DNA of 64,000 nucleotides, taken from positions 1 to 64,000 of the IMG/VR virus record IMGVR_UViG_3300033143_001962. One strand, 5' to 3'. Each line of letters opens with the position of its first letter. Within the stretch, counting starts at the first letter, position 1. Shown here piece after piece: positions 3,667 through 42,100 of the stretch. Made by a program: the position numbers and the translations under genes. The notes under the pieces are model-generated. The model saw only the letters and a list, made by a program, of their open reading frames with translations, was not told the origin of the DNA and searched no databases.

Positions 3667-3946
3667 GCAAGTCTGCTCCGTCAGGTGGAGTTGATTTGAA
3701 CTGTATGGTAGTTGTTGCATTACTTTCAATACTGTAATCAAGTTTATGGCGTAGTTTGCAGCCGTCTTTAAAGACTTCGAATCGCACCTTCTCCAATGTA
3801 AGTGATGGTAATGCAAATACATCGCCCCAACCGTTACCTGTGAAGTGGTTTACACTTATTAGCCGGTCGCTAGCCTGCCTTAGTATATTCCACATTTCCT
3901 TTTTAGACTTAAATGCTTTTGTTATTGTTTTCTTAGGAAGTTTCAT
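3638..3946 (-). CDS. WxxL-tagged mini-protein with virion beta-repeat domain
   Basis: Likely start MKLPKK. Tag KKEMWNILR followed by FTGNG..F...V..DG...DYSI...F..PPDGA. Confidence 0.65.
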   Translation of the reverse strand: MKLPKKTITKAFKSKKEMWNILRQASDRLISVNHFTGNGWGDVFALPSLTLEKVRFEVFKDGCKLRHKLDYSIESNATTTIQFKSTPPDGADLHVSTYTTIN

Positions 3947-4218
3947 TTTAGTCTGCGCCACATTTCCCTTTTGTGATTCTCTTTACGCTCAGCTTTATTT
4001 CTTACATGCACAAAACGTTTATGCTCTACTATCTCATCTAAGTACGGGCAGTTAAACGCAATTTTATCTATGTCATAACTTTGCCCTACTGCTTGACAGG
4101 AGGTAGCAATGTACACACCATCTTGTGATCCGTCAGGCGAGCAGGCATCAATCTCCCACTCAATGTACTCCTGGCATTGTTTATTCCAGCAAAATTCGTT
4201 AAAGACTATGTCAGACAT
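3943..4218 (-). CDS. 4-Cys mini-protein with C-terminal WxRL tag
   Basis: Likely start MSDIV. FNEFCWNKQC...SC...NCPY; ends KREMWRRLK. Confidence 0.65.
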   Translation of the reverse strand: MSDIVFNEFCWNKQCQEYIEWEIDACSPDGSQDGVYIATSCQAVGQSYDIDKIAFNCPYLDEIVEHKRFVHVRNKAERKENHKREMWRRLK

Positions 4219-4522
4219 ATTGTAGTATCCTCCAAATCTTTTCCTTTTTCTTTTGCTTCTGCTCTTCTGCCCATTCCTTTTCAAACAGAAATTTTGCGCG
4301 GGCGTTAGTAACATGCCAATCAACCATACCTTGCAAATGCACACAATTATGCGGGTACGTAGGAATGTTTTCGTCGTTGTCTAAGATCTTAGAGCATGAT
4401 GCATATTCAACAGTGGACACATGAGTTATAAAACCATCTTCCATAATTAATTCTTCGCCGTACTCACTATAGCACTCGCACTCAAAATGATCTCTGCAAA
4501 GTTCGTACCAATTATAACTCAT
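4211..4522 (-). CDS. 4-Cys mini-protein with C-terminal WxxL tag
   Basis: YELCRDHFEC...SC...NCVH; ends KEKIWRILQYV. Confidence 0.65.
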   Translation of the reverse strand: MSYNWYELCRDHFECECYSEYGEELIMEDGFITHVSTVEYASCSKILDNDENIPTYPHNCVHLQGMVDWHVTNARAKFLFEKEWAEEQKQKKKEKIWRILQYV

Positions 4523-4731
4523 TTTAATTTATCCTCAGGGATGGACATTGCATCGTGTATCCTCTGCATGTACTGTTCTCTGAATTTATGCATCGTTGGC
4601 TGCACTGCTGTTTTAATAACATCTATATCTATATCTGCCCATCTATGCCAGCCAGTCTTAGGCTTGTTATCACCTTTAAGCTTATCCCACATTATCCACT
4701 TAGCTGTCTTTGTTTTCTTCGTCTTTTTCAT
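4519..4731 (-). CDS. WxKL-tagged mini-protein
   Basis: Likely start MKKTKK. Contains IMWDKLKGDNKPKTGW, shared with 6000..6311. Confidence 0.6.
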   Translation of the reverse strand: MKKTKKTKTAKWIMWDKLKGDNKPKTGWHRWADIDIDVIKTAVQPTMHKFREQYMQRIHDAMSIPEDKLK

Positions 4732-4969
4732 ATTCTGCTCTGGCTTGTGCAAACTGTTTGTTAGTAATCGGGAGGCCGTGTATCGTCCCGTAAATATCAT
4801 CGTCAGACATTGGCTGTATGCCTACTATATCATTTGCTAATAGTGTTGGCATTACCTTTCTAATCATTGGTATCACTATACTATCAAACCCGGGCTTGTG
4901 TACTTTCTTCAAAGCCCTGAATGTTTTTTGTGCGTCACTTATTGTCTTTTTAGTTAGTTTAAAAGACAT
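4700..4969 (-). CDS. mini-protein carrying the major-capsid Gol-region fragment
   Basis: IVIPMIRKVMPTLLANDIVGIQPMS is 15/25 identical to MCP residues 60-84 in this window. Confidence 0.75.
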   Translation of the reverse strand: MSFKLTKKTISDAQKTFRALKKVHKPGFDSIVIPMIRKVMPTLLANDIVGIQPMSDDDIYGTIHGLPITNKQFAQARAEYEKDEENKDS

Positions 4970-5234
4970 CTATGTACACCGGCATGTTGTTGATCCTTTT
5001 TAAGCTCTTTTCGGGCTCTAATAATTTCTTCCACATCATATCTTTTTTCTTTGCTTCATGCTTTGCTTTCTTAATATCTTCCATGTGTGGGCAATTTTCC
5101 GCTATCTTTAAAATATTAAATGTAATCTTGCTGGTGCCGATGCTGCATGTTATACACCTACCTACTTGCATTTTAATATCAGCGAAGTGCTTACACTCCT
5201 TTGCTCTGCAAAATTCGTTAAAGTTATACGCCAT
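4959..5234 (-). CDS. 4-Cys mini-protein with WxKL tag
   Basis: Likely start MAYNF. FNEFCRAKEC...TC...NCPH, tag KDMMWKKLL, tail INNMPVYIDVF. Confidence 0.65.
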   Translation of the reverse strand: MAYNFNEFCRAKECKHFADIKMQVGRCITCSIGTSKITFNILKIAENCPHMEDIKKAKHEAKKKDMMWKKLLEPEKSLKRINNMPVYIDVF

Positions 5235-5457
5235 TCCTATCATTATACACTTGATTGAGCAATGGTTCTACACCTTTGGATACATCGCGTATAACGCCAG
5301 GGTAGAATGAACTAATATCGTAATCGACTATATGCACACCTGGTTTCATTACGTGTCCTGTCTGTGACAGACGTTTCCACATTGCATCTTGCTCGCGTTT
5401 TAATTGCTTGCGCAAGCCGTTGCGTATTTTACGTTTAGTAATTTCTATTGCATTCAT
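5224..5457 (-). CDS. WxRL-tagged mini-protein with family B DNA polymerase motif A fragment
   Basis: Tag QDAMWKRLS followed by IVDYDISSFYPGVIR (compare PolB DxxSLYPSII). Confidence 0.65.
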   Translation of the reverse strand: MNAIEITKRKIRNGLRKQLKREQDAMWKRLSQTGHVMKPGVHIVDYDISSFYPGVIRDVSKGVEPLLNQVYNDRNGV

Positions 5458-5585
5458 TTATCATCTGGCTCGTTGAATATTATTTTAGCATTTTGGTAAT
5501 CTACCTGAAGCGGTATATACGGGCAATATATATAACCTGCGTTTACCTCTACTTCCACTGGAACGAATTTTAATTTGTCCCACAT
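5454..5585 (-). CDS. 43-aa WxKL-tagged mini-protein with capsid YCPYIPL fragment (not in ORF track)
   Basis: MWDKLKFVPVEVEVNAGYIYCPYIPLQVDYQNAKIIFNEPDDK; AAGGA RBS; ATGA overlap with the next gene. Confidence 0.7.
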   Translation of the reverse strand: MWDKLKFVPVEVEVNAGYIYCPYIPLQVDYQNAKIIFNEPDDK

Positions 5586-5601
5586 TATTTCCTTATCTGT
5601 T

Positions 5602-6003
5602 TTATTCGTGTTGTCCAAACTCTACTCTCTCGGCCATATTTTTCTTAATTTGATTCTGACGGTTCATATTATGAATTGTTCTAGCAAACGATGAGCGACA
5701 TAATACTGTTAAATACGAATACGCATTGCTACTCTTAGTTTCATCGTATCTGTGATAGTACCGTAACATATTAGTAATTGCGTCTTGTATTAAGTCCTCA
5801 GCGTATGTAAACGATTGAAAATTTTTCCTAGTTAATTCTTTCTCTGCTAAATGTACAAGGTACTTTGCTAAGTTGCCAGTCGTTTGTTTAATCAGTTTCG
5901 AGTGACGTATTGCTTCGCGTAACTCTGCGTTGGTTGTGATCTCAACTTGGTTGTACCATGGTGCTTTTAACTTACGCCAAAATAATTTTTGTTCTTTGTT
6001 CAT
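5602..6003 (-). CDS. compact gp55-like (late sigma) paralogue with N-terminal WxKL tag
   Basis: TTGNLAKYL..L.E...R.N...FTY.ED....A......Y DETKSSNAYSY.T....SF.R aligns with 28673..29653. Confidence 0.75.
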   Translation of the reverse strand: MNKEQKLFWRKLKAPWYNQVEITTNAELREAIRHSKLIKQTTGNLAKYLVHLAEKELTRKNFQSFTYAEDLIQDAITNMLRYYHRYDETKSSNAYSYLTVLCRSSFARTIHNMNRQNQIKKNMAERVEFGQHE

Positions 6004-6311
6004 ACAGAAGACGATTCAAAGTCTATTAGAATGGGGCTGTTTTTAGTACGTACTGCCCGGCCAAGACTCTGGAAAGCGATCATACTTTTCCCTACACCAG
6101 ACTGTGCTGTGAATCCATTTATGAAGCTACGGTTAATACCGTGCATGAAGTTTGATGCTTCTGCAAGATTCCGCCAACCTGTTTTCTTAGGTGTATTATC
6201 GCCACTAAGCTTGTTCCATATTTGCGAGGGTGTGCCGTGTATCTTTTCAAACTGCTTACGTTTGCCGTTTGCTATCTTACGTTTATTAATCTGTACTTTA
6301 CTTTCTTTCAT
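6000..6311 (-). CDS. WxKL-tagged mini-protein with RecA/DnaB-type Walker A fragment
   Basis: SQIWNKLS...TGWRNL...GINRSFINGFTAQSGVGKSMI...ILIDFE, then the protein ends. Confidence 0.65.
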   Translation of the reverse strand: MKESKVQINKRKIANGKRKQFEKIHGTPSQIWNKLSGDNTPKKTGWRNLAEASNFMHGINRSFINGFTAQSGVGKSMIAFQSLGRAVRTKNSPILIDFESSSV

Positions 6312-6463
6312 CGTGGTCCTGTATTCTTTGTTGGCTGTTTCATCGACAAAAATATACTAGATAGTAATTTCCATTCTTTCTGTGCTTCGGTGAGTGGAGG
6401 AGTGCTTAACTTCTTCCACATTTCGTGCTGTTCTCTTTCTTCTTTTGTTTTAAATATTTTCAC
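6308..6463 (-). CDS. WxKL-tagged mini-protein
   Basis: Likely GTG start after an AGGA RBS; EREQHEMWKKLS. Confidence 0.55.
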   Translation of the reverse strand: MKIFKTKEEREQHEMWKKLSTPPLTEAQKEWKLLSSIFLSMKQPTKNTGPR

Positions 6464-6743
6464 GGTGCTTCCTGAGTTTTGCTTTTGCTTGTACCCGTGT
6501 ACTAAAATCCGTAGATTCCACATCACGCATCAAATTTGCCAGTGCATCCCTTTCTTGTGCTAATCGTTTTTCTTCTTCGTAGTCAACATCAGCAGACATC
6601 ATTCGTGCTCTAATTCTGACAGACATATCCTGATCTTTACATAATAAATCCAAGTGCTTGCGGGTATGGATTAGCTCAATCTTTTCTTCTTGCGTCAGTG
6701 CTGAAATACGTAGCACATCAAATAAGTCTGTTTCAGTTGTCAT
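6450..6743 (-). CDS. small helical-repeat-like protein, paralogue of 8065..8268
   Basis: DLF..L...ALTQ.EK...I...KHLD....D.D..VR..AR. Confidence 0.6.
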   Translation of the reverse strand: MTTETDLFDVLRISALTQEEKIELIHTRKHLDLLCKDQDMSVRIRARMMSADVDYEEEKRLAQERDALANLMRDVESTDFSTRVQAKAKLRKHRENI

Positions 6744-6900
6744 ATAACGTTTTCTTCTTGCCCATTGTTGCCATTAAGTACGATCTGACTAGATAATTAT
6801 CTTGTACCGCGAAGTTAGGATCAATCCAATATGACTCAACGGCATGCTGAATGCTTCCGTACTTTAATTTTAAAAATGTTACCACTTGTTCAATTTCCAT
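6733..6900 (-). CDS. FLxLKYGS-family mini-protein, 55 aa (not in ORF track)
   Basis: MEIEQVVTFLKLKYGSIQHAVESYW...; directly downstream of a promoter. Confidence 0.65.
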   Translation of the reverse strand: MEIEQVVTFLKLKYGSIQHAVESYWIDPNFAVQDNYLVRSYLMATMGKKKTLYDN

Positions 6901-6949
6901 TTCTAATCGCCAATAGCCGCTTGTTTATGAGGTTGCGCTTTTAAGCTAC

Positions 6950-6979
6950 ATAATAACATTTTATGTTATAAAAAGTCAA
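6950..6979 (-). promoter_or_regulatory. sigma70-type early promoter
   Basis: TTGACT-18 nt-TATTAT with TGn extension. Confidence 0.6.
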
Positions 6980-6986
6980 GTATTTG

Positions 6987-7328
6987 CTAAACATCATTTG
7001 CCAAAATTGCTGTGGCTGATGGCTTTATGCGTTTACGATCGTTGTCGTACTGAGCTGTAGCAATTTCAATACTGCTTAAATGTTTTAATAATGAGTGGAG
7101 TTTTTTATCTTCGTTGCCTAACTTTGACCACATAATGTCTTTGCTGAACAAGGTGCGAATCGCGTTAACGTTTGTTTCAATTCTTTCTAACCTGCCATTG
7201 AACTCGCCTACGTTTCCATTGTGCTGCCGGACCGTGTGTGCGAGCTTAGTTTTCAACCCCGAAATTTCATCGTCTTTGTCACGGAGTTGTTGTTGCAGGT
7301 CTCTAATTAAATTCTTCTTAGCTGTCAT
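6987..7328 (-). CDS. coiled-coil protein with internal WxKL tag
   Basis: Heptad-rich N-half; KDIMWSKLG. Confidence 0.6.
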   Translation of the reverse strand: MTAKKNLIRDLQQQLRDKDDEISGLKTKLAHTVRQHNGNVGEFNGRLERIETNVNAIRTLFSKDIMWSKLGNEDKKLHSLLKHLSSIEIATAQYDNDRKRIKPSATAILANDV

Positions 7329-7380
7329 AAATCACCTAAATGTTATCAATACTACGCTTTCTTACTACGACTACGAGCTA

Positions 7381-7409
7381 AGTATAACATTTTTTGGTGC
7401 AGAAGTCAA
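7381..7409 (-). promoter_or_regulatory. sigma70-type early promoter
   Basis: TTGACT-17-TATACT with TGn extension. Confidence 0.75.
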
Positions 7410-7582
7410 GCTTTTCGCTTATTTAGGTTAATAAAGTTGTAATTATTGTATTGTTCTTTGGAGTACAGTAGGAGTGCTTTGTGTTCGTCGTTGGATAGAT
7501 TGATATCATTGTTGACCCAAAGGTCGAATGCGTTTGTCATGCTGCCGTACTTGAGAATTAGAAAGGTTTTTGCCTGGTCCAT
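7406..7582 (-). CDS. FLxLKYGS-family mini-protein, 58 aa (not in ORF track)
   Basis: MDQAKTFLILKYGSMTNAFDLW... Confidence 0.65.
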   Translation of the reverse strand: MDQAKTFLILKYGSMTNAFDLWVNNDINLSNDEHKALLLYSKEQYNNYNFINLNKRKA

Positions 7583-7634
7583 AGTAAATATTTACCATAG
7601 TACGGCTTTTTACGTGGGGGCGCTTTTGACCCTA

Positions 7635-7663
7635 AGTATAACGTTTTGTTATTTAAAAGTCAA
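7635..7663 (-). promoter_or_regulatory. sigma70-type early promoter
   Basis: TTGACT-17-TATACT. Confidence 0.75.
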
Positions 7664-7869
7664 GTTTTTATTAGCAGTTTGAAGAACATTGCGTCTTGCT
7701 CTTGCTCAAACCAGAAGACTGGGGCGGTGTACTGATATATAAATTTGCCAGTGGTGTGCTTGCTGCACCATGCGGATAGTTCTAATAGATTATTTTTACT
7801 ATGTGTGAATGATACTTTATACCATGTGTTTCTATCAAAGGCATCGTAACATTCTTGATTCTTTTTCAT
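7660..7869 (-). CDS. small hypothetical phage protein (W-C...FWFEQEQDAMFFKL type)
   Basis: Overlaps the upstream gene (ATGA); motif style common in small phage proteins. Confidence 0.6.
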   Translation of the reverse strand: MKKNQECYDAFDRNTWYKVSFTHSKNNLLELSAWCSKHTTGKFIYQYTAPVFWFEQEQDAMFFKLLIKT

Positions 7870-8072
7870 CGGAAGTTATTTATTTTTTTCAGTATATCAA
7901 GCAACTCCGGAATGTCCGGGTGTAAGTCCGGATCAATGCTATCCAGCCAGTGCTTGAACTCTTGGTCGTATTTTTGTATATTGATTTCTTTAATGAGCTC
8001 TAATTTCTGCTCGGTGGTTAAATACTCTTTGGTTAATCTATGCCACAGTTCTTTCTTTTCTTCTTCACTCAC
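7866..8072 (-). CDS. mini-protein with N-terminal WxRL tag
   Basis: MSEEEKKELWHRLT. Confidence 0.6.
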   Translation of the reverse strand: MSEEEKKELWHRLTKEYLTTEQKLELIKEINIQKYDQEFKHWLDSIDPDLHPDIPELLDILKKINNFR

Positions 8073-8268
8073 TTTGCCATCCTAGCGTTTTAAGTTGTTT
8101 GTTTATTCTAACGTACTCTTGTTTATGCTTTTGCTTTCTTGCGTATCTTCTAACTTCACTATCATCATCGTTTTCAAAATAATCTAAGTGCTTGTTACTA
8201 GCAATGCATAACATCTTTTCGTACTGAGTGAGGGCGTTTAATTTTATAATTGTGAATAAATCTTCCAT
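8065..8268 (-). CDS. paralogue of 6450..6743
   Basis: Likely start MEDLF; ALTQYEK...KHLDYFENDDDSEVRRYAR. Confidence 0.6.
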   Translation of the reverse strand: MEDLFTIIKLNALTQYEKMLCIASNKHLDYFENDDDSEVRRYARKQKHKQEYVRINKQLKTLGWQSE

Positions 8269-8373
8269 AGCTATGTCTGTGTTTTTGCGCTTGGGCAACT
8301 CACTTCGTGCCTTGCGTTCTCTCTGTAAGTTACAGTCGAACCTACTCACCAAGCTCCTTGCTTTCGCAGACTA

Positions 8374-8403
8374 AGCATAACATATTTTAGAGGCAAAAGT
8401 CAA
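8374..8403 (-). promoter_or_regulatory. sigma70-type early promoter
   Basis: TTGACT-18-TATGCT with TGn extension. Confidence 0.6.
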
Positions 8404-8418
8404 CCGAGGTTTGCCAAA

Positions 8419-8859
8419 CTAAACGTTGTCGTTTTCATGTAGGCGTGTGTATAATGATAGTGCTAAATCAAATTGCATAATATGTGACATTATCCAGGGA
8501 CGGATTATCGATACTAAGTAGTATCCCATAACTTTTGGATTATGCGATAACTGTGATGTGTCAGCAACTTGATGACGTATATCATTGTGTGATTCTTTGT
8601 GACAATCGGCTGCTAATTTAGGAAATCCAATTCTATGCATTAGTGCTTCTTCGTGTTCTAAATGTGTGTCAACGTAGTCAACTAGCTCATCGTAGTACTG
8701 CTGAATGTGCTCTATTGTTGGGTCATCGTGTGTAATTTCGTTAATAATATTATTGCATAATTTAAACAGATTTCGGTGTTCGTTATCTATTTGTAAGTCG
8801 CCTGTTTCAAGGTCAGGTTGCCATTCTAACGGCGTTAGATTATCGGATTGTGGGGTCAT
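8419..8859 (-). CDS. bacteriohemerythrin
   Basis: W...LETGDLQIDNEH..LF, HLEHEEALM, HKESH, WIMSHIMQFD: complete hemerythrin di-iron ligand set (H, HxxxE, HxxxH, HxxxxD). Confidence 0.9.
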   Translation of the reverse strand: MTPQSDNLTPLEWQPDLETGDLQIDNEHRNLFKLCNNIINEITHDDPTIEHIQQYYDELVDYVDTHLEHEEALMHRIGFPKLAADCHKESHNDIRHQVADTSQLSHNPKVMGYYLVSIIRPWIMSHIMQFDLALSLYTRLHENDNV

Positions 8860-8891
8860 TGTATAGTCCTATTTTAAGTTAGCTATTAGTA

Positions 8892-8920
8892 ATTGTAGCA
8901 CGGAATCGCACCAAAGTCTA
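8892..8920 (-). promoter_or_regulatory. sigma70-type promoter for hemerythrin
   Basis: TAGACT-17-TACAAT with TGn; a GATAAATA late-type box also lies at 8930..8937. Confidence 0.55.
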
Positions 8921-8942
8921 GTAGTTTTTTATTTATCGTGTT

Positions 8943-9089
8943 TCATTTTAATGCAAAAAATTCGTTAAGCATATTGAATTCTGCTACTGGCATTTTAGCG
9001 ACTGCTGACCAATTCATCATCATATCATATGCTTTTTGTTGTGATCCGTACTTAATAACAATGAATGATTTTATTTCTTCAGTACTCAT
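8943..9089 (-). CDS. FLxLKYGS-family mini-protein
   Basis: Likely start MSTEEIKSFIVIKYGSQQKAYD. Confidence 0.6.
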   Translation of the reverse strand: MSTEEIKSFIVIKYGSQQKAYDMMMNWSAVAKMPVAEFNMLNEFFALK

Positions 9090-9261
9090 AAGTGTACGCT
9101 CCTGTTCGGCGATTATTGTCTTTTGCCCATTGTGCAATCAGATCTGATTCTTCTTGTGTAAATGAGGTATCATCAAATTTATACATCCATTCTTCATAAG
9201 CAAGTATCATACTACCGTACTTTAGTACAAGAATTAGTTCAGTGTCTTTACCCGTTTTCAT
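9079..9261 (-). CDS. FLxLKYGS-family mini-protein
   Basis: ELILVLKYGSMILAYEEW. Confidence 0.65.
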   Translation of the reverse strand: MKTGKDTELILVLKYGSMILAYEEWMYKFDDTSFTQEESDLIAQWAKDNNRRTGAYTYEY

Positions 9262-9403
9262 CTGACCACCATTCCATAAATTCAGTTAGCATTGCGTCGA
9301 GATCTGTACCTAAATCGTCACCTGTAAAATTACAATACACCATTACAATGTCATCATTGGACCCGTAACGTAATCTTAAATATGTTAGTACCGCTGGATT
9401 CAT
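9248..9403 (-). CDS. FLxLKYGS-family mini-protein, 51 aa (not in ORF track)
   Basis: MNPAVLTYLRLRYGSNDDIVMVY...; ATGA overlap with 9400..9618. Confidence 0.6.
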   Translation of the reverse strand: MNPAVLTYLRLRYGSNDDIVMVYCNFTGDDLGTDLDAMLTEFMEWWSDENG

Positions 9404-9618
9404 GCTTTTAACTTTGCCCACATGTACAATCTATTAATTTCTTCGTCAAACTCAGGTGTGCGTATCGTGTACCCTTTGCCGTTAATTCTATACTGGTAAT
9501 TATCAAAATCGTAAGTCTTAGGTGCAGAGACTCTGTAGTGTCTGACCCAGAACAATGTGCCATTTAAGCATTCGTATACTACATCACGTTGGTGCATTAT
9601 AACCGAGACACTATTCAT
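9400..9618 (-). CDS. RINGxxY-family mini-protein with C-terminal WxKL tag
   Basis: YRINGKGY...EFDEEINRLYMWAKLKA. Confidence 0.6.
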   Translation of the reverse strand: MNSVSVIMHQRDVVYECLNGTLFWVRHYRVSAPKTYDFDNYQYRINGKGYTIRTPEFDEEINRLYMWAKLKA

Positions 9619-9940
9619 CTTTCTTCTCCGGGACGTGGTCTACTACTAATCTAAGTTCATGCATTGTTAAACGTGTGTACATACCAGGTGGTAGATTTAT
9701 CCAGTAATGATATGCATTAAACACTGACCCGTACTTCCAAATTAGTACCATCTCGGCGTTATCTTTAGTAACATCCAATGTCTCCAGGCAGCCCTGTTCG
9801 CACCATAAATTTAATAGTGGTGGTACATTTTCAACTGTTCTGACTCCTGGCATGTTAACTGCTACTTCAAACGCTGTGATCACTTCTCCGATTGAAGAGT
9901 ACTTAAGTGACAGGAATACTTGCTGTTCATCTTCAGTCAC
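9611..9940 (-). CDS. tandem two-domain FLxLKYGS-family protein
   Basis: VFLSLKYSS and MVLIWKYGSVFNAY. Confidence 0.65.
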   Translation of the reverse strand: MTEDEQQVFLSLKYSSIGEVITAFEVAVNMPGVRTVENVPPLLNLWCEQGCLETLDVTKDNAEMVLIWKYGSVFNAYHYWINLPPGMYTRLTMHELRLVVDHVPEKKDE

Positions 9941-10124
9941 TTAGCTTCTCCCACACACGTTCTTTCTTACGTTCTTCATAAAATGCTTTTCTGTACTCAA
10001 GTGTATTTTCACTGTACAGTACATCGTTAATACGAAGTGTAACCCAGCTTTGTGAAATTGCACTTTGTCGTAGCGTACTGCATACTTGCGCAAATTTACC
10101 ACTGCTTAATTCAATTTCAATCAC
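9933..10124 (-). CDS. RINGxxY-family mini-protein with C-terminal WxKL tag
   Basis: LRINDVLY...KERVWEKLSD. Confidence 0.6.
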   Translation of the reverse strand: MIEIELSSGKFAQVCSTLRQSAISQSWVTLRINDVLYSENTLEYRKAFYEERKKERVWEKLSD

Positions 10125-10311
10125 TTAGCTTCTGCCATATCTCTGCTTTTTCAATAAATTCTGTTGCTGCTCGTCTAAATGCGTACGAATCTTTTTTGTA
10201 AATAACACCTTTAATTCTGAACGTGTGCCACGCAAAATTAGGATTCTTTAAACGTGGCACATTAGCCTTCACCCAATACCCGCAGTACTTTTCTCTATAA
10301 TGTGCTTTCAT
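10117..10311 (-). CDS. RINGxxY-family mini-protein with C-terminal WxKL tag
   Basis: FRIKGVIY...KAEIWQKLSD. Confidence 0.6.
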   Translation of the reverse strand: MKAHYREKYCGYWVKANVPRLKNPNFAWHTFRIKGVIYKKDSYAFRRAATEFIEKAEIWQKLSD

Positions 10312-10320
10312 ACCCGCCTA

Positions 10321-10497
10321 CTAATAGTTGTGCTCTTGCTGAACAAATCGATAATACCAATCTAACATCTCGTGTCGTTGTACTGTAGTAAACAAATCAT
10401 AATCGCTTCGTAAGTCGCCGTCACGCATTGCGTCGTAAGCGTTAGCCATGCTCCCGTACTTTAATATTAAGAATGTTCTAGTCTTTTCAGGACTCAT
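10321..10497 (-). CDS. FLxLKYGS-family mini-protein, 58 aa (not in ORF track)
   Basis: MSPEKTRTFLILKYGSMANAYDAM... Confidence 0.65.
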   Translation of the reverse strand: MSPEKTRTFLILKYGSMANAYDAMRDGDLRSDYDLFTTVQRHEMLDWYYRFVQQEHNY

Positions 10498-10696
10498 TGT
10501 ACAATTCCTTTATGAAGAAGTCAAGCATCAATTCTTCTTGTTGATTAACATTCATTAAATGGTATGCTATCTGGTCTCCGAATTCAAGCGAGTCATGAAA
10601 CGCATCAGCTAACTGTTCTAAGCCGCCGTGTTTAAGTGCTAAGAATGTGTATTCCTCGGTTGTTATAAAATCATCAAGTTCAACGGTTTCAGTCAT
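10487..10696 (-). CDS. FLxLKYGS-family mini-protein
   Basis: YTFLALKHGGLEQLADAF. Confidence 0.6.
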   Translation of the reverse strand: MTETVELDDFITTEEYTFLALKHGGLEQLADAFHDSLEFGDQIAYHLMNVNQQEELMLDFFIKELYNES

Positions 10697-10697
10697 T

Positions 10698-10886
10698 TTA
10701 ATCCCACATGTACCTGCGTCTGTTCAATTCACTGTCAGTTGCGTAGTAAAAGTAATTGTTCATTATTGTGTAGTCATCCGGCACTTGCTTTCCAACAACG
10801 GTACTAGTATTCATAAAGACTTGATAGGCTTTGTACACCGTACCGTACTTTAAAATTAAATAAGATTTAGTTGCTGCGTAGTTCAT
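10698..10886 (-). CDS. FLxLKYGS-family mini-protein
   Basis: KSYLILKYGTVYKAYQVF. Confidence 0.65.
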   Translation of the reverse strand: MNYAATKSYLILKYGTVYKAYQVFMNTSTVVGKQVPDDYTIMNNYFYYATDSELNRRRYMWD

Positions 10887-11086
10887 AATATGATCTTCTG
10901 TACACGTTCAGGAATTATTAAATCACCTTGTTCCTTTTTAGATTTAATATGCGATTGAATAAAGCTTAGTAATTTGTAGTAGTCTGGATCACTGTCGAGT
11001 CCTAGTGATCGCAATGCACTGTACCTAGAAAAGATATGTGCTACGCTTCCATATTTAAGCATAAGGAATGTGTCTTCAGAATTCAT
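10883..11086 (-). CDS. FLxLKYGS-family mini-protein
   Basis: DTFLMLKYGSVAHIF. Confidence 0.65.
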   Translation of the reverse strand: MNSEDTFLMLKYGSVAHIFSRYSALRSLGLDSDPDYYKLLSFIQSHIKSKKEQGDLIIPERVQKIIL

Positions 11087-11277
11087 TAAATTAAATCCAT
11101 TGCATATTCCATTGCAGATTTAGTTCTTATCGCAAGATGGTGTGCCCAAGCATACCCTACTATCATGCATTGTTCATCTTCTGTAAAATCAGCATCCCAA
11201 TCATCAGATATGTTATAAGCATCAATGGCATTTTCCATGCTACCGTACTTTAATATTAAGAATGTTTTAATTGGCAT
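11086..11277 (-). CDS. FLxLKYGS-family mini-protein
   Basis: KTFLILKYGSMENAIDAY. Confidence 0.65.
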   Translation of the reverse strand: MPIKTFLILKYGSMENAIDAYNISDDWDADFTEDEQCMIVGYAWAHHLAIRTKSAMEYAMDLI

Positions 11278-12146: not shown

Positions 12147-13337
12147 TTAGCTGAAAGACAAGTTGCTTACGCTGATTTCGCCTAAGTAATCACCAGCATT
12201 ACCAAAAGATGATGCAGTGTTAGTGAGTTCCACGTAACCATAACGTGTCATGAAGCTTACAACTGGTTCGAACGTAGACGGATCTAAAACAACGCCTGAG
12301 CTCATTAAAGGAATGTAAGGGCAGTAGAACGCTGGAGCGTCTGCTTCACTTGAACCTTTATAACCAATAAGTACCGGAGTACTATCAGCAGCATATGAAT
12401 CAACATATACTTTCATAGCACTGTTTAATGTACCAACTAACTTAGTGTTAGTAGGAGCTTCAAAAGTACCTTCAGTTGTACGTGCAAATGCAGATGTAGT
12501 AGCTGATTGTAATACTGTTAATGCAGCTGGACTAACAACGGCATAGTTACCTGCGCCACGACGTGTACGTTGTGCGATAAGGTTAGCAGTACGGTTAACT
12601 AATACAGCAAGTGCCGCATGTTCATCACCTACGAATGTAGCAGTACCAGATACAGCAGCTTGATCGTAGTTGAATTCAGTTGACGCTAAAGAACGTAAAG
12701 ATAATAAAATCTCTTGATCGATTTCAGCGGTAATTTCTTGTGCTAATGCAGCCATGATTTCAGCTTCGACATCAATGCCGTGCATTGATTGTGCATCTTG
12801 AGCAGCTTCAAAAGTCCAACGCGCTTGTAACTTACGTGTCTTCGCTTCAACAGCTTGCTTTAAGATTTGAACGGAAATGTTACGACCGCCTTCACCTTCC
12901 ATTTGCGCTGTAGCAGCACCACGGTAGTCAGTCTGTGTAGCACCAACGCCTGCAGAGTATGCTTGAGCAATTTTGAAAGGACTTAACGCTTCATCACCAG
13001 CTGTAGTTGGTGTACCAGCAGCAGATGTATCGTTCATTGTTGAACCGTAACGTACACGTAAAGTATGGATCTGGCTTACTGGACCAGACATTGGTTGAAC
13101 ACCTACTAATTCGTTTGCAATTACCGTAGGCATTACACGTCGAATTACTGGTAAAATTACACGGTTTAATGTTGCAACGTTACCAGCGGCAGTAGCGCCA
13201 CTTGTAGCAGATTCTGCTAAGTGGTTACGAGTGTTTTCTAGGATTACGCCCATTGTAGAACGTTTAGTACCGTCTAGACCTTCAAGCAATGCTTCTTTAG
13301 TCTCTCCCCAACGGCCTTCTAATAGTGCTTGTGACAT
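12147..13337 (-). CDS. gp23: major capsid protein (T4 gp23-like)
   Basis: RRVMPTVIANELVGVQPMSGP, KTRKLQARWTFEAAQD..HGID.EAE, FYCPYIPL, FMTRYG. Confidence 0.95.
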   Translation of the reverse strand: MSQALLEGRWGETKEALLEGLDGTKRSTMGVILENTRNHLAESATSGATAAGNVATLNRVILPVIRRVMPTVIANELVGVQPMSGPVSQIHTLRVRYGSTMNDTSAAGTPTTAGDEALSPFKIAQAYSAGVGATQTDYRGAATAQMEGEGGRNISVQILKQAVEAKTRKLQARWTFEAAQDAQSMHGIDVEAEIMAALAQEITAEIDQEILLSLRSLASTEFNYDQAAVSGTATFVGDEHAALAVLVNRTANLIAQRTRRGAGNYAVVSPAALTVLQSATTSAFARTTEGTFEAPTNTKLVGTLNSAMKVYVDSYAADSTPVLIGYKGSSEADAPAFYCPYIPLMSSGVVLDPSTFEPVVSFMTRYGYVELTNTASSFGNAGDYLGEISVSNLSFS

Positions 13338-27797: not shown

Positions 27798-28686
27798 GAA
27801 GCTCCTTTGGGTATGTATATGTCCATAATTCTGTTGTTGTTTTGGGAAAGTCGTCACCAATGTCATTACATCTTAATTCGAGATTTAATTCTTCTCTAAG
27901 ATATTTTTGTATGTATGCTTCGTCGTATACGGTACTGTCGTCTGGCATGTTGCAATTAATGTGTTTAGTAAAGTTATCTAAGAACAGTGCTATATCTTTG
28001 TCCTTATTAAGGTGCTTTTGTAAGCTTAACATTTCATTGTGATTTGTCATTATAGTGTCGTAACTTTCGGTTACGTCGAAGTTAAGTTCACGCGCTAACC
28101 GCATTAATGTATTTTTAAAATCAAATAATAAATCTTTGATGTTGATTTCAATACACTTGTCCTTGCTATTATATTCGCCAACTGAATTTACGCCTTTGAT
28201 AAATTCTTTATAACTGTAAAATTCTCGCATGTTTGCAACTTTTGAAAAATCCTCATCATTGATTTCTTTTCTATGCTGGTCTATTAGATATCTGTCATGA
28301 ACTTTATCGTGCTTGTTGTTGCGAATTAATAAATGCATGTCTGCGTCGGATCTAATTAATATACCTTTGACAACTTTTGATAAAATGTAATCAACACTTT
28401 CACCAGCACTCGAATCGGTTAAGTCACGCTCGTCATTAAATACATGATGCATTCGGAAAAACGGAAGTGTGTCTGGCCCGTGTACATGTTGCTCGAACGT
28501 AGGCATGTTAATCCTTGAGTTATATATTGTGAAATTTTTCTGCGTGTGAGAATTGCCATTCTTTCCCCACGGCAATTCCGGACTATCACAAAGCCCAATG
28601 CTGGTAAAATTGTTAAGTACCCAATAAAGATACGACCCGTATGCTCCAGGCTCGTATATTATAGGTATTGTTTTACTTTTTGTCAA
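27790..28686 (-). CDS. hypothetical protein, possible sulfotransferase-like P-loop fold
   Basis: N-terminal IIYEPGAYGSYL loop. Confidence 0.35.
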   Translation of the reverse strand: MTKSKTIPIIYEPGAYGSYLYWVLNNFTSIGLCDSPELPWGKNGNSHTQKNFTIYNSRINMPTFEQHVHGPDTLPFFRMHHVFNDERDLTDSSAGESVDYILSKVVKGILIRSDADMHLLIRNNKHDKVHDRYLIDQHRKEINDEDFSKVANMREFYSYKEFIKGVNSVGEYNSKDKCIEINIKDLLFDFKNTLMRLARELNFDVTESYDTIMTNHNEMLSLQKHLNKDKDIALFLDNFTKHINCNMPDDSTVYDEAYIQKYLREELNLELRCNDIGDDFPKTTTELWTYTYPKELHE

Positions 28687-29653
28687 GTTTCTCGTCTGTT
28701 AAATGTTTGTCGTCTGAGTTGTCATTACTAAACTGTCTAGTCCAGCTAGGAGTTAGTCCGTTAGCTTCTAAAATGTCATCACGTATGTTCTGCATCTTCT
28801 TCTCGATGTTTAGTACCCTGGTAAAGCTGTTAGTAACTGCGGCAGTGTAGTACGCAAATGGATTTTGTGATTTCATTTCATTAAACTGTAGTCCAATTTG
28901 ACTAAGCTGTAATAAAGCTTGCCCTTGCATCTCATCATTGTAAGTATAACCACGCCAGTTACTGCGCGTTCCGTAACGTTCGCATAACTTCATGTACATC
29001 ATTGCTAAGTTGCCAGTCGTCCGCCCGTGATCTTTATTAAATGCACCAGTTTCTAAATCACCTTTCCAATGACTCTTACCTACTAGCTGTACTGCCATAG
29101 CATTATCGCCTTCCATAGCAAACCCGTGGTCTGCTAACTTTGAAACACGGTAGTGATAAAATGCAGGAAAGCCACAACGCATAGGAATCATTTCTACTTC
29201 GAGCCCAGTGCCGTCTAGTAACTCTAATTCATCGTCGTTTAATAAATCATCAAACACTGCATTAGCTTTTGCCTGCTTAGCCGCTTTAGCAGTAGCAGCT
29301 TTTGATTTCTTTTTAGGTACAAGTGGAATGTGTTCTGTAGTCATTACTCTGTAAACTACATCTTCTAATTTGATATCTTCTAATTCGGTGGGAATGTCAA
29401 GCTTTGTTAAGCGTGTTGCCCTTGCCTGTCTGCCAAGTAGTGTAACCGGTACGTCTTCCATGATGGGCTTTCCATCTTTGTCTTTGCTTACTTCGACATT
29501 TTGTGTACCCCAAATGTCCGATAAGTTTTCTACTATGAAGTCTTGTTGATTGTCTTCTACTTTGTCCAGAAAAGAACAGTATGAAATTTTACTTAAGTGT
29601 ATCTCTTTCAACATATCCTTGTTATTTAAATAATTCTTTTTACGTTTAGCCAT
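28673..29653 (-). CDS. gp55: late transcription sigma factor (gp55-like)
   Basis: NYLNNKDML, RSNWRGYTYNDEM, FNEMKSQNPFAYYT; adjacent to gp47/gp46 as in T4; likely start MAKRKK. Confidence 0.85.
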   Translation of the reverse strand: MAKRKKNYLNNKDMLKEIHLSKISYCSFLDKVEDNQQDFIVENLSDIWGTQNVEVSKDKDGKPIMEDVPVTLLGRQARATRLTKLDIPTELEDIKLEDVVYRVMTTEHIPLVPKKKSKAATAKAAKQAKANAVFDDLLNDDELELLDGTGLEVEMIPMRCGFPAFYHYRVSKLADHGFAMEGDNAMAVQLVGKSHWKGDLETGAFNKDHGRTTGNLAMMYMKLCERYGTRSNWRGYTYNDEMQGQALLQLSQIGLQFNEMKSQNPFAYYTAAVTNSFTRVLNIEKKMQNIRDDILEANGLTPSWTRQFSNDNSDDKHLTDEKLDKK

Positions 29654-29681
29654 ACATCTCCTTGTAGCTTTAGATTTAACT

Positions 29682-29709
29682 ATTATAGCACATAAGCATA
29701 ATAAGTCAA
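29682..29709 (-). promoter_or_regulatory. sigma70-type promoter for gp55-47-46 operon
   Basis: TTGACT-16-TATAAT with TGn extension. Confidence 0.7.
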
Positions 29710-29743
29710 CCATAATTTATTATATTGGGTTATAATATGTACT

Positions 29744-39101: not shown

Positions 39102-42100
39102 ATGGCAAGAATTCGTAGTGTAGATTTTTTACCTGAAATCTTTCAAACAGAGACTAACAAAAAGTTCTTGAACTCAACTCTTGATCAATTAATTCAAGAG
39201 CCAAAGTTTAAAGAAGTACAAGGTTACATCGGACGTAGGAATGCACCTGGTGCAACGCCAACTGATGGCTATGTACTAGAACCTACAGCTGATCGTACTA
39301 ACTATCAACTTGAACCGGGCGTGACATTTAAAGATAGCGATGGCAAGACAATTGATGCTCTATCTTACTTAGGACTTATTAACGGACTTAAGGCTGCAGG
39401 CGCGAATGTTGATAATCACGATCGTTTATTCCGTAGTGAGACATACAGTTGGAGTCCGTTTATAGACTTTGATAAATTTGTTAACTACTCACAGTATTTT
39501 TGGTTACCGGCTGGCCCAGATAGCGTAGACGTAGGCGAACTTGCTGACGGCGTACTGTTAACTAACGACTTTAACATGGAGCAAGAAGAAGATACATACA
39601 GCGTAGAAGACTACAGTATCGACAATCCAATCATTACAGTAGCACGTGGTGGCGAATATACATTTAATGTTAATCAACCAGGACAAGAGTTCTTTATACA
39701 AGCACAACCAGGTGCCGACGGTACCATGCCATGGGCTGCAAACATTAGTTCACGTGACGTACTTGGTGTTAGCAACAACGGCGAAGACAGCGGCGCAGTA
39801 CAATTTAACGTACCGCAAAGTAACGCACAAGACTTCTACCATAACTTAACAAGCATAGGTGATGTTGATTTAGCAACCTCAGTACGCATGGATGAGATTG
39901 CAGATCAATTATTAGATGATGTCGGTGAACACTTAGGCATACAAAACATCAACAACAATACTATTGTATTTTTAAATGATCAACTAGGCGATGCAGTCGA
40001 CTTAGGTTGGATCAATAATGGAATCCCACTGACAACATTAGCAGAACGTTATCAAGTTTTTAAAATCGTTCTCGAAGACGTCGCAGGCGATGTGTATGTT
40101 AGACTAAACCCTTACCAACTTGTAAATAACTTAGAAAAGTTTACAGTACAGTACGGTAACGAACACAGTAACAAGACATTTTATAAAACTCAACAAGGTG
40201 TGTTTAAAGAGATGCCAATTTTAACAGCATCATTGACTACACTGTACTATCAAGATTCATCACACCCGGATCGCTTTGGTGTTATAAACATAGTCGATGC
40301 AAATGAATCTCCTACACTTAATATAAGTGATATACTTGGCAGAACAGATTACACTAGCGCAAATGCAGTGGTGTTTACTAATGGATTAAAAGTTAAATTC
40401 CGCGGCAACACAAACCCAGCAGAGTACAGCGACAATGAGTACTTCGTTGAAGGCGTAGGCACTGCTATTAAGTTAGTCGCTGTCAGCGATTTAATAATAC
40501 CAGAAGCGTATGCTAAGAGTACGACAGCACCATGGGATACTAGCCCATTTGATTCAGCAGGACTCGATGGAACATTAAATGCCCCACTTGATCAAGACTA
40601 CATCACAATTAACAGATCAAGCATTGATAGAAACGCTTGGTCGCGTAGTAACAGATGGTTCCACATTGATGTAATTACTAAGACAGCAGAATATAATAAC
40701 GTTGTACTAGACTTAGATAATAACGACAGAGCAGACAGACCCGTAATAGAGTTTGATGCAGACTTACGTTTATTTAATTACGGCACTAACGGTAAGGATA
40801 GTATTAACATAGTAGACACTACAGAAGTAGATGCACTTTCAAACGTTAATGACGAAGAAAGCTATACTATAGACGGATATAACTTAGTAGAAGGATCACG
40901 GGTTGTTTTCGCAGCAGATGCGGATTTATCAGTGCGTAATAAAATTTATGTTGTTGAACTAGTTGACTTAAACAACAACGGCACAGAGACTATAAACTTA
41001 ACTCTTGCAGAAGATAGCGAAAGTGAAAACAATGACGTTGTACTTGTTACTAACGGATTAACACAACAAGGCGCAGTGTTTACATTTACTAATAATGTAT
41101 GGGTACAATCACAACAAAAAGAATCAGTTAATCAAGCTCCATTGTTTGATGTGTTTGATACAGCTGGTACCTCACTCAGTGATTTACAAGCATATCCAAG
41201 TACTTCATTTGCAGGTACTAAGGCATTTAGTTATGCAGAAGGAACTGGTCTTAAAGATAAAGTCTTAGGCTTTCCATTAAAGTACTTAAACATTGATAAC
41301 TTAGGTGACATCGTTTTCGAGAACAACCTTTACACTGATACGTTTATTTACGTAGAGAACAGTGTATCAAAAGACAATAGCCCGGTTGGCGATGGTTACT
41401 TAAGAAAGTACAGCACACGAGAAGAATACACAAATGAAATTGGTTGGTCTAAGACAGTTGAAGAATCGTACTTAGCACAAATTTTAAACTTCGAGTACAC
41501 AGGTGCAGCACTTGAATTAGATGTATTACCTAAGGTAGGATTGAGTATACCAGCTGTACATATTACTATTAACAACGAATTTATTAACCCTTCAGACTAC
41601 ACAGTAACTGATAACGTTATTACATGTTCGAATATTATTGCAGAAATAGGCGATACTATCACTGTTAATGTTATAAGTGACGAAGTAAGTAAATTAGGTT
41701 ATTACGAAATTCCAAGTAATATAGCAAGCAACATGTTTAATGAAAATACAGATTTGCTTACACTAGGTACAATCCGTAATCACTTTAATAACTTATCACA
41801 ACATATCTTAGACATTGATGGTGATGTAAACGGTGCAAACAACTTACGTGACTTAGGCGACATAAGCCGTTACGGTAATTTAATTGTACAGCAATCAGCA
41901 CCACTGGCACTTGCAGCAATGTTTATGCGCAACAAAGAATATAACTTCTTTAGTGCTACAGAGTTCAATGCAAGACAATACGAGAAATTTAAAAACCAAT
42001 TAATGGATTGGGTTAGTAAGAACGAAGTATACGGAATGGATGCAGGCGAAGTACTTGATGCCGCATTGAAAGAATTAAATGCTAACAAGCACGTAGACGG

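What the first reader, a model, noticed from the sequence alone, without database searches (positions are those of the whole stretch)
5224..5457. 77-aa protein holding family B DNA polymerase motif A and a pre-motif-B-like piece
IVDYDISSFYPGVIR matches PolB motif A (DxxSLYPSII), and GVEPLLNQVYNDR resembles the G(I/V)xPxxLxxxxxxR segment before motif B, with the intervening sequence deleted. It is far too small to be a polymerase. Its leader (ITKRKIRNGLRKQ..W..LS) is shared with the Walker A fragment ORF (INKRKIANGKRKQ..W..LS), showing different cargos swapped behind the same leader.
Basis: partly seen in the sequence, partly recalled or inferred. Interest (0 to 1): 0.65.

Follow-up and report, generated by a model that had tools for sequence, protein, structure and literature searches.

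The report
Phage microprotein mimicking polymerase motif A
This real 77-residue phage gene joins a conserved basic helical leader to a short copy of the DNA polymerase's most conserved active-site motif. It belongs to an apparently undescribed family whose members carry copies of capsid, helicase or polymerase motifs and may act as baits or decoys.

Summary
The ORF at 5224-5457(-) is real. It shows coding-type codon usage, has an ATGA overlap with the gene upstream, and sits in an array with early-type promoters on a 250-kb contig of an uncultivated T4-related jumbo phage.

Residues 35-71 align colinearly with the phage's own family B polymerase (residues 376-414), covering the YV..P..G segment, motif A and the residues just after it. 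No Pfam PolB hit exists and BLAST alone is noise, but several tests agree:
- A clade motif-A profile ranks this ORF first among 2,095 genome ORFs (E 0.006; 2 of 200,000 shuffles reach its score).
- Two related phages carry small ORFs with an even clearer D.D[IV][SN]SLYP.
- A profile built only from the three small proteins finds true PolB motif A in four genomes.

The "pre-motif-B piece with a deletion" is not supported.

The leader is confirmed and general. A confident 31-residue basic helix (RKIRNG.RKQ...W.[KR]L) heads at least 20 metagenomic proteins. Their cargos copy T4-type major capsid protein (Gp23) motifs (Pfam-significant), a DnaB-type Walker A, or PolB motif A.

Function is unknown. 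My best guess (about 0.4) is a tethered motif mimic that baits a host factor recognising conserved phage proteins.

The parts
5224..5457 (-). Gene for the 77-aa leader+cargo microprotein (the finding)
   Evidence: ORF list. Codon-usage log-odds positive only in this frame. ATGA start/stop overlap with the upstream ORF. The identical protein is the only word-index hit in the 5.8-billion-protein collection.
5359..5457 (-). Leader, residues 1-33: basic (net +7) single alpha-helix containing RKIRNGLRKQ and MWKRL
   Evidence: Leader alignment A3 of 16 proteins has invariant R, N, R, K, L and near-invariant W. Leader profile hits this ORF at E 2e-14. AF2 with a 24-sequence alignment gives a helix at 3-33 with pLDDT 92-97.
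5368..5382 (-). MWKRL, the [MIVF]-W-x-[KR]-L tag shared with 14 other minus-strand ORFs between 2.9 and 10.3 kb and with the N-terminus of the short sigma
   Evidence: Motif census and codon comparison show that wobble positions differ, so conservation is at the protein level. The sigma N-terminal tag is conserved in 8 orthologues.
5245..5355 (-). Cargo, residues 35-71: contiguous copy of the PolB region around motif A (own PolB residues ~376-414)
   Evidence: AF2 confidence is low here (pLDDT 47-63), consistent with a peptide that is unstructured on its own.
5296..5325 (-). Motif-A core DYDISSFYPG. D47 aligns with PolB D390, S50 with S393, Y52 with Y395 and P53 with P396
   Evidence: Alignment with own PolB, G001 PolB and the two related small ORFs. 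The PolB invariant columns come from alignment A2.
6000..6311 (-). In-genome paralogue with the full leader and a Walker-A-type cargo (SGVGKS)
   Evidence: phmmer E 7e-4 to the target. Leader profile E 1.4e-20. Orthologue P0003 has a conserved cargo. The cargo type in L032 matches DnaB_C (E 0.009) and phrog_19 DnaB-like helicase (E 4.8e-5).
6950..6979 (-). Nearest upstream sigma-70-like promoter (TTGACT, 18 nt, TATTAT with TG), one of a repeated TTGACTT...TGTTATACT family. Expression from it is inferred
   Evidence: Promoter scan. Repeat family D1. Genome-wide pattern count is 43 against 22 expected, concentrated in small-gene arrays. No minus-strand terminator-like site lies between it and the gene.
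5602..6003 (-). Linked short gp55-like late sigma (133 aa) carrying the same tag at its N-terminus
   Evidence: phrog_234 E 8e-22 and Pfam Sigma70_r2 E 4e-5. Found next to leader-family genes in L027, L030, L031, L032, L033, L035/36 and L044.
6308..6526 (-). Decayed positional homologue of the PolB-motif cargo (…KEWKLLSSIFLSM), frame-split from 6450-6743
   Evidence: tblastn of the L032 151-aa ORF: residues 2-95 match frame 1 (E 3e-19) and residues 87-126 match frame 2 (E 8e-5).

Best explanation
What is shown: this is an expressed-type phage gene encoding a two-part microprotein.
- Part 1 (residues 1-33) is a family-defining, strongly basic single helix ending in W-x-[KR]-L.
- Part 2 (residues 35-71) is a probably unstructured peptide. 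It copies the phage PolB segment that runs from YV..P..G through motif A (D..S[LF]YP) and the following turn.
- It cannot polymerise DNA.
- It is one cassette of a family in which the same leader carries copies of the most conserved motifs of core phage proteins: four different Gp23 capsid segments, a DnaB-type Walker A, and PolB motif A.

What is inferred: the gene is transcribed early, from sigma-70-like promoters. The cargo acts as a motif mimic, meaning a tethered bait that occupies a factor which recognises that conserved polymerase segment. That factor is most plausibly a host protein that senses or acts on conserved phage proteins. The leader helix supplies a common function such as anchoring, oligomerisation, or nucleic-acid or hub binding. 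The partner is not identified.
For: Identity:
- Coding frame and gene packing.
- Leader family: 17 proteins at E<=1e-3 among 1.84 billion representatives; leader alignment; further loci.
- Leader modelled as a confident helix.

Cargo equals PolB motif A:
- for the target itself.
- Independent small ORFs L032:368-823 and L033:1090-1290 carry D.D[IV][SN]SLYP. They are the top two motif-A hits among 509 ORFs of related loci.
- The three cargos align with each other and with PolB.
- A profile of the three finds true PolB motif A, and nothing else for its cargo part, in G000, G001, G005 and G006 (E 0.008, 0.012, 0.034, 4.7e-4).

Selection on the motif:
- The residues kept in all three cargos (D, S, L/F, Y, P) are the PolB invariants.
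- The frame-split positional homologue in this window has lost them. That shows what unconstrained decay looks like.

Mimicry is general in the family:
- Leader proteins match Pfam Gp23 above or near threshold (5e-12, 5e-6) and phrog_138.
- One cargo matches the MCP gene in 430 phage records.

Early, arms-race-like context:
- Repeated sigma-70-like promoters.
- Cassette presence and absence differs between related phages.

Host relevance:
- Bacterial STAND sensors are reported to detect the MCP, portal, DNA polymerase and helicase/RecA-type ATPase. Lit and CapRel detect the MCP through short motifs (PMC13581612; PMC3014915). The cargo repertoire overlaps that target list.
Against: - There is no functional data, no identified partner, and no orthologue of this exact gene.
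- Pfam PolB does not hit, and each PolB-likeness statistic is modest on its own.
- Motif A is buried at the active site of a folded polymerase.
- The reported polymerase sensor (Avs19) recognises family A polymerases by fold, independent of the catalytic Asp. A 35-residue peptide may therefore be irrelevant to such sensors.
- A bait that binds an activating sensor could trigger it rather than block it.
- Early expression is inferred only from promoter-like sequences.
- The host is unknown.
Confidence: 0.4

Rival explanations
1. The leader is the functional part and the cargo is a relic. The basic helix does the job, for example by binding nucleic acid like an arginine-rich motif, or by binding RNA polymerase, the sigma or a clamp through the W.[KR]L tag. 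The C-terminal peptides would be captured gene fragments that serve only as tails, their likeness to PolB being inherited and not used.
For: The leader is the only confidently folded and the most conserved part. The same tag sits on the short gp55-like sigma in all 8 orthologues, and leader genes are linked to that sigma gene. Cargo tails beyond the motif are not conserved between orthologues. Some members have cargos with no recognisable source (P0004, P0008, P0016).
Against: The cargos keep exactly the invariant residues of their parent families across divergent phages. A decayed copy exists in the same window for contrast. Walker-A and capsid cargos are conserved between orthologues as strongly as the leader.
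Confidence: 0.25
2. The protein is a dominant-negative or regulatory fragment aimed at phage proteins. The peptide would interfere with folding, assembly or partner binding of a family B polymerase, either the phage's own (as a timing control) or that of a co-infecting T4-like competitor (as exclusion). This is how protein fragments can inhibit their parent proteins.
For: Fragments tiled from essential proteins commonly inhibit the parent protein (PMC9245647). The capsid cargos correspond to highly conserved Gp23 profile regions (positions 6-37, 147-196, 309-328). Small early proteins are typical exclusion factors (established T4 biology).
Against: The cargo retains the invariant residues that self and competitor share, so it could not spare the phage's own polymerase. 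Inhibiting replication early would be self-defeating. Motif A has no free docking site on a folded polymerase.
Confidence: 0.15
3. The PolB likeness of this particular ORF is a chance resemblance. The protein would be a leader-family member with an unrelated cargo.
For: BLAST E 0.012 is at the genome-wide noise level. There is no Pfam hit. hhalign probability is only 54%. The hypothesis was formed after reading 64 kb.
Against: It is the best non-polymerase hit of the motif-A profile in the genome, and the shuffle test gives p about 1e-5. Two other phages, retrieved by leader similarity and not by PolB similarity, have small tagged ORFs with a clearer motif A. The reciprocal profile finds PolB in four genomes. 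Protein-language-model neighbours are enriched for PolB-family clusters, which is a lead only.
Confidence: 0.08

Closest known systems
Family B DNA polymerase (Pfam PF00136), motif A region
   Same: Colinear sequence likeness to YV..P..G....D..S[LF]YP plus about 15 following residues. The aspartate aligned with the catalytic Asp is kept, as are the Ser, Tyr and Pro.
   Different: The protein has 77 residues. It has no exonuclease domain, no motif B or C, no fingers or thumb, and no Pfam hit, so it cannot be an enzyme. The motif sits behind an unrelated helical leader.
T4 Srh and Srd, small early phage proteins resembling a segment of host sigma-32 or sigma-70 and proposed as decoys (from my own knowledge: Mosig et al. 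1998, Gene 223:143; not checked here)
   Same: A small early phage protein made essentially of a copy of one conserved segment of a much larger protein, thought to act by competition.
   Different: Srh and Srd copy host proteins. Here the copied proteins are the phage's own core proteins, many different cargos share one leader, and there is no sequence relation.
Short-motif sensing of the T4 capsid protein (Gol peptide with EF-Tu and Lit protease; CapRel)
   Same: A short, highly conserved peptide of a core phage protein is the biologically recognised unit (PMC3014915; PMC13581612). The neighbouring ORF 4700-4969 carries a segment that, by my recollection of the T4 gp23 sequence, corresponds to the Gol region.
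   Different: In those systems the peptide is part of the full-length capsid protein and triggers defence. Here the peptides are free-standing early proteins, and for PolB motif A no sensor is known.
microProteins and dominant-negative protein fragments (PMC7584889; PMC9245647)
   Same: A small protein related in sequence to one part of a larger protein, expected to act by competing for that part's contacts.
   Different: Those are known in plants and animals or as engineered fragments. No phage family with a common leader and a repertoire of cargos has been described.
T4 internal proteins with a capsid-targeting sequence, and RiPP precursor peptides (leader plus variable cargo architectures; from my own knowledge)
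   Same: A conserved N-terminal leader followed by unrelated, rapidly exchanged C-terminal parts, located in a hyperplastic locus.
   Different: The leader here is a 31-residue basic helix, not a 10-residue tag cleaved at L/I-x-E. The promoters look early, not late. No modifying enzyme is found nearby. The cargos copy motifs of other proteins.

Membership tests
Family B DNA polymerase (PF00136) | Scores above the Pfam gathering threshold | tested here: not met
   hmmscan gives no family at E<=10. A genome search with PF00136 hits only the 923-aa polymerase gene.
Family B DNA polymerase (PF00136) | Motif A (D..SLYPS) in its sequence context | tested here: met
   Clade motif-A profile E 0.006, best non-polymerase ORF. 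hhalign P 1.3e-4. Reciprocal profile finds PolB motif A. The final Ser is replaced by Gly.
Family B DNA polymerase (PF00136) | Motifs B (K...NS.YG) and C (DTDS), and the exonuclease domain | tested here: not met
   The protein ends 24 residues after the motif-A core. The pre-motif-B profile gives no hit. The sequence shows no such motifs.
Leader-cargo microprotein family (defined here) | N-terminal RK[IV]RNG.RKQ followed about 10 residues later by W.[KR]L, within one long helix | tested here: met
   Leader profile E 2e-14. Alignment A3. Helix at 3-33 with pLDDT 92-97.
Leader-cargo microprotein family (defined here) | Cargo copies a conserved motif of a core phage protein | tested here: met
   PolB motif A for this member. 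Gp23 for P0006, P0012, L032:3998-4258 and L032:3516-3941. DnaB-type Walker A for L032:792-1019. A minority of members have no identified source.
T4-type internal protein with capsid-targeting sequence | Short N-terminal tag ending in an L/I-x-E protease site, and late expression | tested here: not met
   There is no consistent L/I-x-E after the leader in alignment A3. The upstream promoters are sigma-70-like. TATAAATA is not enriched. Virion content is not testable here.
RiPP precursor peptide | Leader-recognising or modifying enzyme encoded nearby | tested here: inconclusive
   Pfam, PHROG, NCBIfam and PADLOC scans of the neighbours at 4.5-6.5 kb show none. The whole genome was not screened, and 28% of it is missing.
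Anti-defence decoy of a host sensor | Binds and blocks a host immune sensor of the copied protein | not testable with these tools
   The host and any sensor are unknown. There is only a conceptual overlap with the reported target list.

The most novel reading that the evidence does not exclude
These jumbo phages encode an exchangeable library of early 'epitope' microproteins. A common helical leader presents short copies of the very motifs by which bacterial pattern-recognition defences (Lit/CapRel-type motif sensors, or STAND sensors of the capsid protein, polymerase, helicase or portal) recognise the core phage proteome. Acting as competitive antagonists, they would blunt those sensors before the real late and replication proteins appear. 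The 77-aa protein would be the polymerase-directed member of that library.
Probability: 0.3. Interest if true: 0.9.

Novelty: new variant of a known kind. Interest (0 to 1): 0.75.

Why it matters
Bacteria are now known to sense much of the conserved phage proteome, including capsid, portal, polymerase and helicase. How phages answer sensors aimed at parts they cannot mutate is an open question.

A family of early proteins that copy exactly those immutable motifs behind one leader would be a new counter-strategy, or a new regulatory principle. It is directly testable with co-expression screens.

Even if the function differs, the family shows that short conserved motifs of core proteins are duplicated, kept under selection and exchanged as cassettes. 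This matters for annotation, because such ORFs are otherwise called 'major head protein' fragments or ORFans. It also offers natural peptide tools.

Tried and rejected
- Library scans of the 77-aa protein gave nothing usable. Pfam, NCBIfam and PADLOC returned none, and PHROG only a chance-level 0.17.
- PDB sequence search gave only ribosomal protein L29 at E 2.1, taken as chance.
- The word-index protein search found only the protein itself. A peptide-pattern scan of viral contigs found no orthologue. Megablast of 4-8 kb against phage records found none.
- The pre-motif-B reading was rejected.
- BLAST alone was rejected as evidence after a genome-wide null.
- AF2 with 3 sequences was poor, pLDDT 57. 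The 24-sequence run resolved only the leader.
- Complex prediction of the short sigma with the 77-aa protein gave no verdict, so it counts neither for nor against.
- The look-up of sequencing runs listed none, so read laying was not used and expression is untested.
- The T4 late promoter TATAAATA is not enriched. Rfam gave no hits.
- A DNA-level explanation of the leader was rejected. The two leaders are 54% identical in nucleotides, with different codons at 5 of 13 identical residues, and no DNA repeat joins them.
- Mobile-intron or homing-endonuclease debris was considered. Relatives' PolB genes are interrupted, but at motif C, not motif A.
- The capsid-targeting/internal-protein and RiPP readings were considered and not met; see the membership tests.
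- The Ralstonia phage RsoM2USA 'hypothetical protein' hit turned out to be its unannotated full-length capsid gene, not a fragment.
- Five further clade genomes had no extra PolB-cargo ORF.

Full report
**Setting**

The window is the first 64 kb of a 249,797-bp IMG/VR viral contig (38.6% G+C, CheckV completeness 72%). It is a distant T4-type jumbo phage:
- Its Gp23-family capsid protein (12147-13337, minus strand) is 68% identical to that of Vibrio phage 2.275.O and 64% identical to PA5oct.
- The portal protein is T4-like.

Downstream of the capsid gene and a strong terminator (12123-12098) lies a tightly packed minus-strand array of about 45 small genes (11.65 to 2.4 kb). The array is punctuated by a repeated sigma-70-like promoter, TTGACTT...TGTTATACT. 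The finding lies in this array.

**Is the gene real?**

ORF 5224-5457(-) encodes 77 residues. Three observations support a real gene:
- Its ATG overlaps the TGA of the preceding ORF (ATGA).
- Codon-usage log-odds against a model trained on the phage's long genes is positive only in this frame.
- The overlapping plus-strand ORF scores negative.

The nearest upstream promoter-like site is at 6979-6950, with no terminator-like site in between. Early co-transcription with the neighbours is therefore inferred, not shown. No sequencing run could be listed.

**Is the PolB likeness real?**

The phage's own polymerase is at G000 214604-217375 (923 aa). The evidence builds in steps.

- BLAST: residues 38-70 align with PolB 379-413 (34% identity, E 0.012). 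A genome-wide control shows this is not evidence by itself, because 26 of 1,966 small ORFs reach that E-value against some large protein. Pfam PF00136 does not hit.
- Clade profile: a 51-column profile of the motif-A region from 22 clade polymerases ranks the 77-aa ORF first among all 2,095 ORFs outside the polymerase (13.2 bits, E 0.006; the next is 0.25). Only 2 of 200,000 shuffles of the protein reach this score.
- hhalign against a PolB alignment gives P 1.3e-4 and probability 54%.
- Independent relatives: loci fetched through the leader, not through PolB likeness, contain two small tagged ORFs, L032:368-823 (151 aa) and L033:1090-1290 (66 aa). Their cargos read D-N-D-I-S-S-L-Y-P-S and D-M-D-V-N-S-L-Y-P. 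They are the top two motif-A hits among 509 ORFs of those loci.
- Joint alignment: the three cargos align with each other and with PolB across H/Y-V-x-x-P ... D-x-D-[IV]-[SN]-S-[LF]-Y-P.
- Reciprocal test: a profile built from the three small proteins alone finds the true PolB motif A in G000, G001, G005 and G006 (E 0.008, 0.012, 0.034, 4.7e-4). For its cargo half it finds nothing else.

I put the probability that the cargo is a PolB motif-A copy at about 0.85.

**The second piece**

A profile of that PolB region (around GIIPGLLKRWYAERK) finds nothing in the ORF. Both HMMER and hhalign extend the motif-A alignment straight through GVEPLLNQV onto the residues that follow motif A in PolB. The cargo is one contiguous copy with two small internal deletions.

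**The leader**

- Within the genome, the 77-aa ORF and 6000-6311 find each other (E 7e-4).
- A profile search of 1.84 billion proteins returns 17 proteins of 57-131 residues. Scans of viral and metagenome contigs add more.
- All begin with M-K-E-T/S-x-x-x-[IV]-x-x-R-K-I-R-N-G-x-R-K-Q, then about 10 residues, then V/M-W-D/K-R/K-L (alignment A3).
- With 24 sequences, AF2 models residues 3-33 as one helix at pLDDT 92-97. The cargo stays at 47-63.
- The two leaders in this genome share 54% nucleotide identity and differ in codons at conserved residues, so the constraint is on the protein.

A shorter version of the tag (K/E-rich, then W.[KR]L) occurs in 15 minus-strand ORFs between 2.9 and 10.3 kb. 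It also occurs at the N-terminus of the short gp55-like sigma 5602-6003, where Q and W are invariant in eight orthologues. Leader genes and this sigma gene are neighbours in every locus long enough to show it.

**The cargos**

Most full-leader proteins carry the Gp23 segment R-K-L-x-A-x-W-T-x-E ... H-G-x-D-x-E.
- Pfam Gp23 scores 5e-12 for L032:3998-4258. Gp23 hits are precomputed for P0012 and P0006. phrog_138 scores 2e-9. One cargo matches the capsid gene in 430 phage records at up to 58% identity.
- Other tagged ORFs carry Gp23 profile positions 6-37, 168-196 or 309-328.
- Others carry a DnaB-type Walker A (DnaB_C 0.009; phrog_19 4.8e-5).

In this window, capsid copies are at 4700-4969 (E 2e-8 to own MCP residues 60-84) and 5454-5618. 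Elsewhere in the genome they are at 156721-156921 and 57583-57834.

Cassette content differs between relatives. In L027 the order is Walker-A ORF, sigma, MCP C-terminal ORF, then a homologue of 4519-4800, with no 77-aa gene. So 'different cargos behind one leader' is supported.

**Selection**

The residues conserved among the three PolB-type cargos are the polymerase invariants.

The window also holds the positional homologue of the L032 151-aa gene. Here it is split by a frame change into 6450-6743 and 6308-6526, and its motif has decayed to L-L-S-S-I-F-L-S-M. That contrast argues that the motif in the 77-aa protein is maintained by selection.

**Mechanism**

Nothing here shows function. I rank the options as follows.
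- Bait for a host factor (about 0.4). I favour a tethered motif mimic that baits a host factor. The reasons are that the cargos are exactly the least mutable motifs of the core proteome, the context looks early and fast-evolving, and the repertoire overlaps the reported targets of bacterial sensors: MCP, portal, DNA polymerase, helicase/RecA ATPase, and short-motif sensing by Lit and CapRel. The weaknesses are listed under the best explanation.
- Leader-centred model with relic cargos (0.25).
- Dominant-negative action on polymerases (0.15). This is disfavoured because the cargo keeps the residues that self and competitor share.
- Chance (0.08).

A complex prediction of the sigma with the 77-aa protein gave no verdict.

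**Novelty**

No library (Pfam, PHROGs, NCBIfam, PADLOC), none of the isolate phages matched by tblastn with a leader-bearing member (no match covers the leader), and no paper found describes this leader or a family of core-motif copies. The nearest concepts are fragment decoys (T4 Srh/Srd), microProteins, and leader-cargo loci (T4 internal proteins, RiPPs). Each shares only one feature with this family.

**Limits**

The contig is incomplete, the host is unknown, and the exact gene has no orthologue on record.

Noticed in passing
window 4700-4969 (-): An 89-aa ORF contains a 25-residue copy (60% identical, E 2e-8; Pfam Gp23 1e-8) of own MCP residues 60-84. By my recollection of T4 gp23 this corresponds to the Gol region, reported as the most conserved part of gp23, which binds EF-Tu and triggers Lit. 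The same cargo type follows arginine-rich leaders in L030, L032, L038, L039, L042 and L043.
   Followed up: partly
window 5454-5618 (-); L027:752-919; L035:4001-4267; L044:1468-1743: Small tagged ORFs carry the MCP C-terminal motif (G-Y-I-Y-C-P-Y-I-P-L type). Between this window and L027 the tag and motif are conserved, but the tail after the motif is not.
   Followed up: partly
window 5602-6003 (-) and 28673-29713 (-): A short (133 aa) gp55-like late sigma lacks a C-terminal tail and carries the W.[KR]L tag at its N-terminus. A 346-aa protein shares its C-terminal 86 residues (29% identity, E 1.5e-11). Which of the two is the working late sigma is unclear.
   Followed up: partly
window 6308-6743 (-): 6450-6743 and 6308-6526 together correspond to a single 151-aa gene in L032. 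They are split here by a frame change, and the PolB-motif cargo has decayed.
   Followed up: yes
G000 156721-156921 (-), 57583-57834 (+), 233130-233321 (-): Further small ORFs outside the array show copies of MCP residues about 168-220 (E 2e-4 and 0.003) and of two portal segments (E 0.004 and 0.019). The first has the W.KL tag.
   Followed up: no
window 6733-11277 (-): About eleven paralogous small genes share an N-terminal F-L-I-L-K-Y-G-S motif. They are interleaved with four ORFs of a second family that ends in W.KL-S-D/K-A directly before the next start codon.
   Followed up: no
window 3943-4344, 4211-4522, 4959-5243 (-): Three paralogous Cys-rich ORFs (F-N-E-F-C ... C-P-H) carry the W.[KR]L tag near the C-terminus. 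Homologues sit next to the sigma gene in L029-L033 and L038.
   Followed up: no
P0003, P0004, L032:1463-1648, L034:998-1210, L035:4001-4267: Many family members end in a recurring C-terminal D/E-T-T-A (or V-T-A) tail, which could be a second signal. The 77-aa protein lacks it.
   Followed up: no
L019-L024 (relatives' PolB genes): The polymerase gene is interrupted at residues about 630-635 (motif C, YGDTDS) by a 0.6-1.4 kb insert with a frame change. This suggests a mobile intron in that lineage.
   Followed up: partly
L026 (Vibrio phage 2.275.O, 317.5-321.3 kb): The cultivated relative also has a small-gene array directly after its capsid gene. Four of its ORFs end in T-Y/W-E-L-L, a possible analogue of the tag. 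No leader-family member was seen there.
   Followed up: partly
window 39102-52130 (+): A single 4,342-residue ORF. It was not examined.
   Followed up: no
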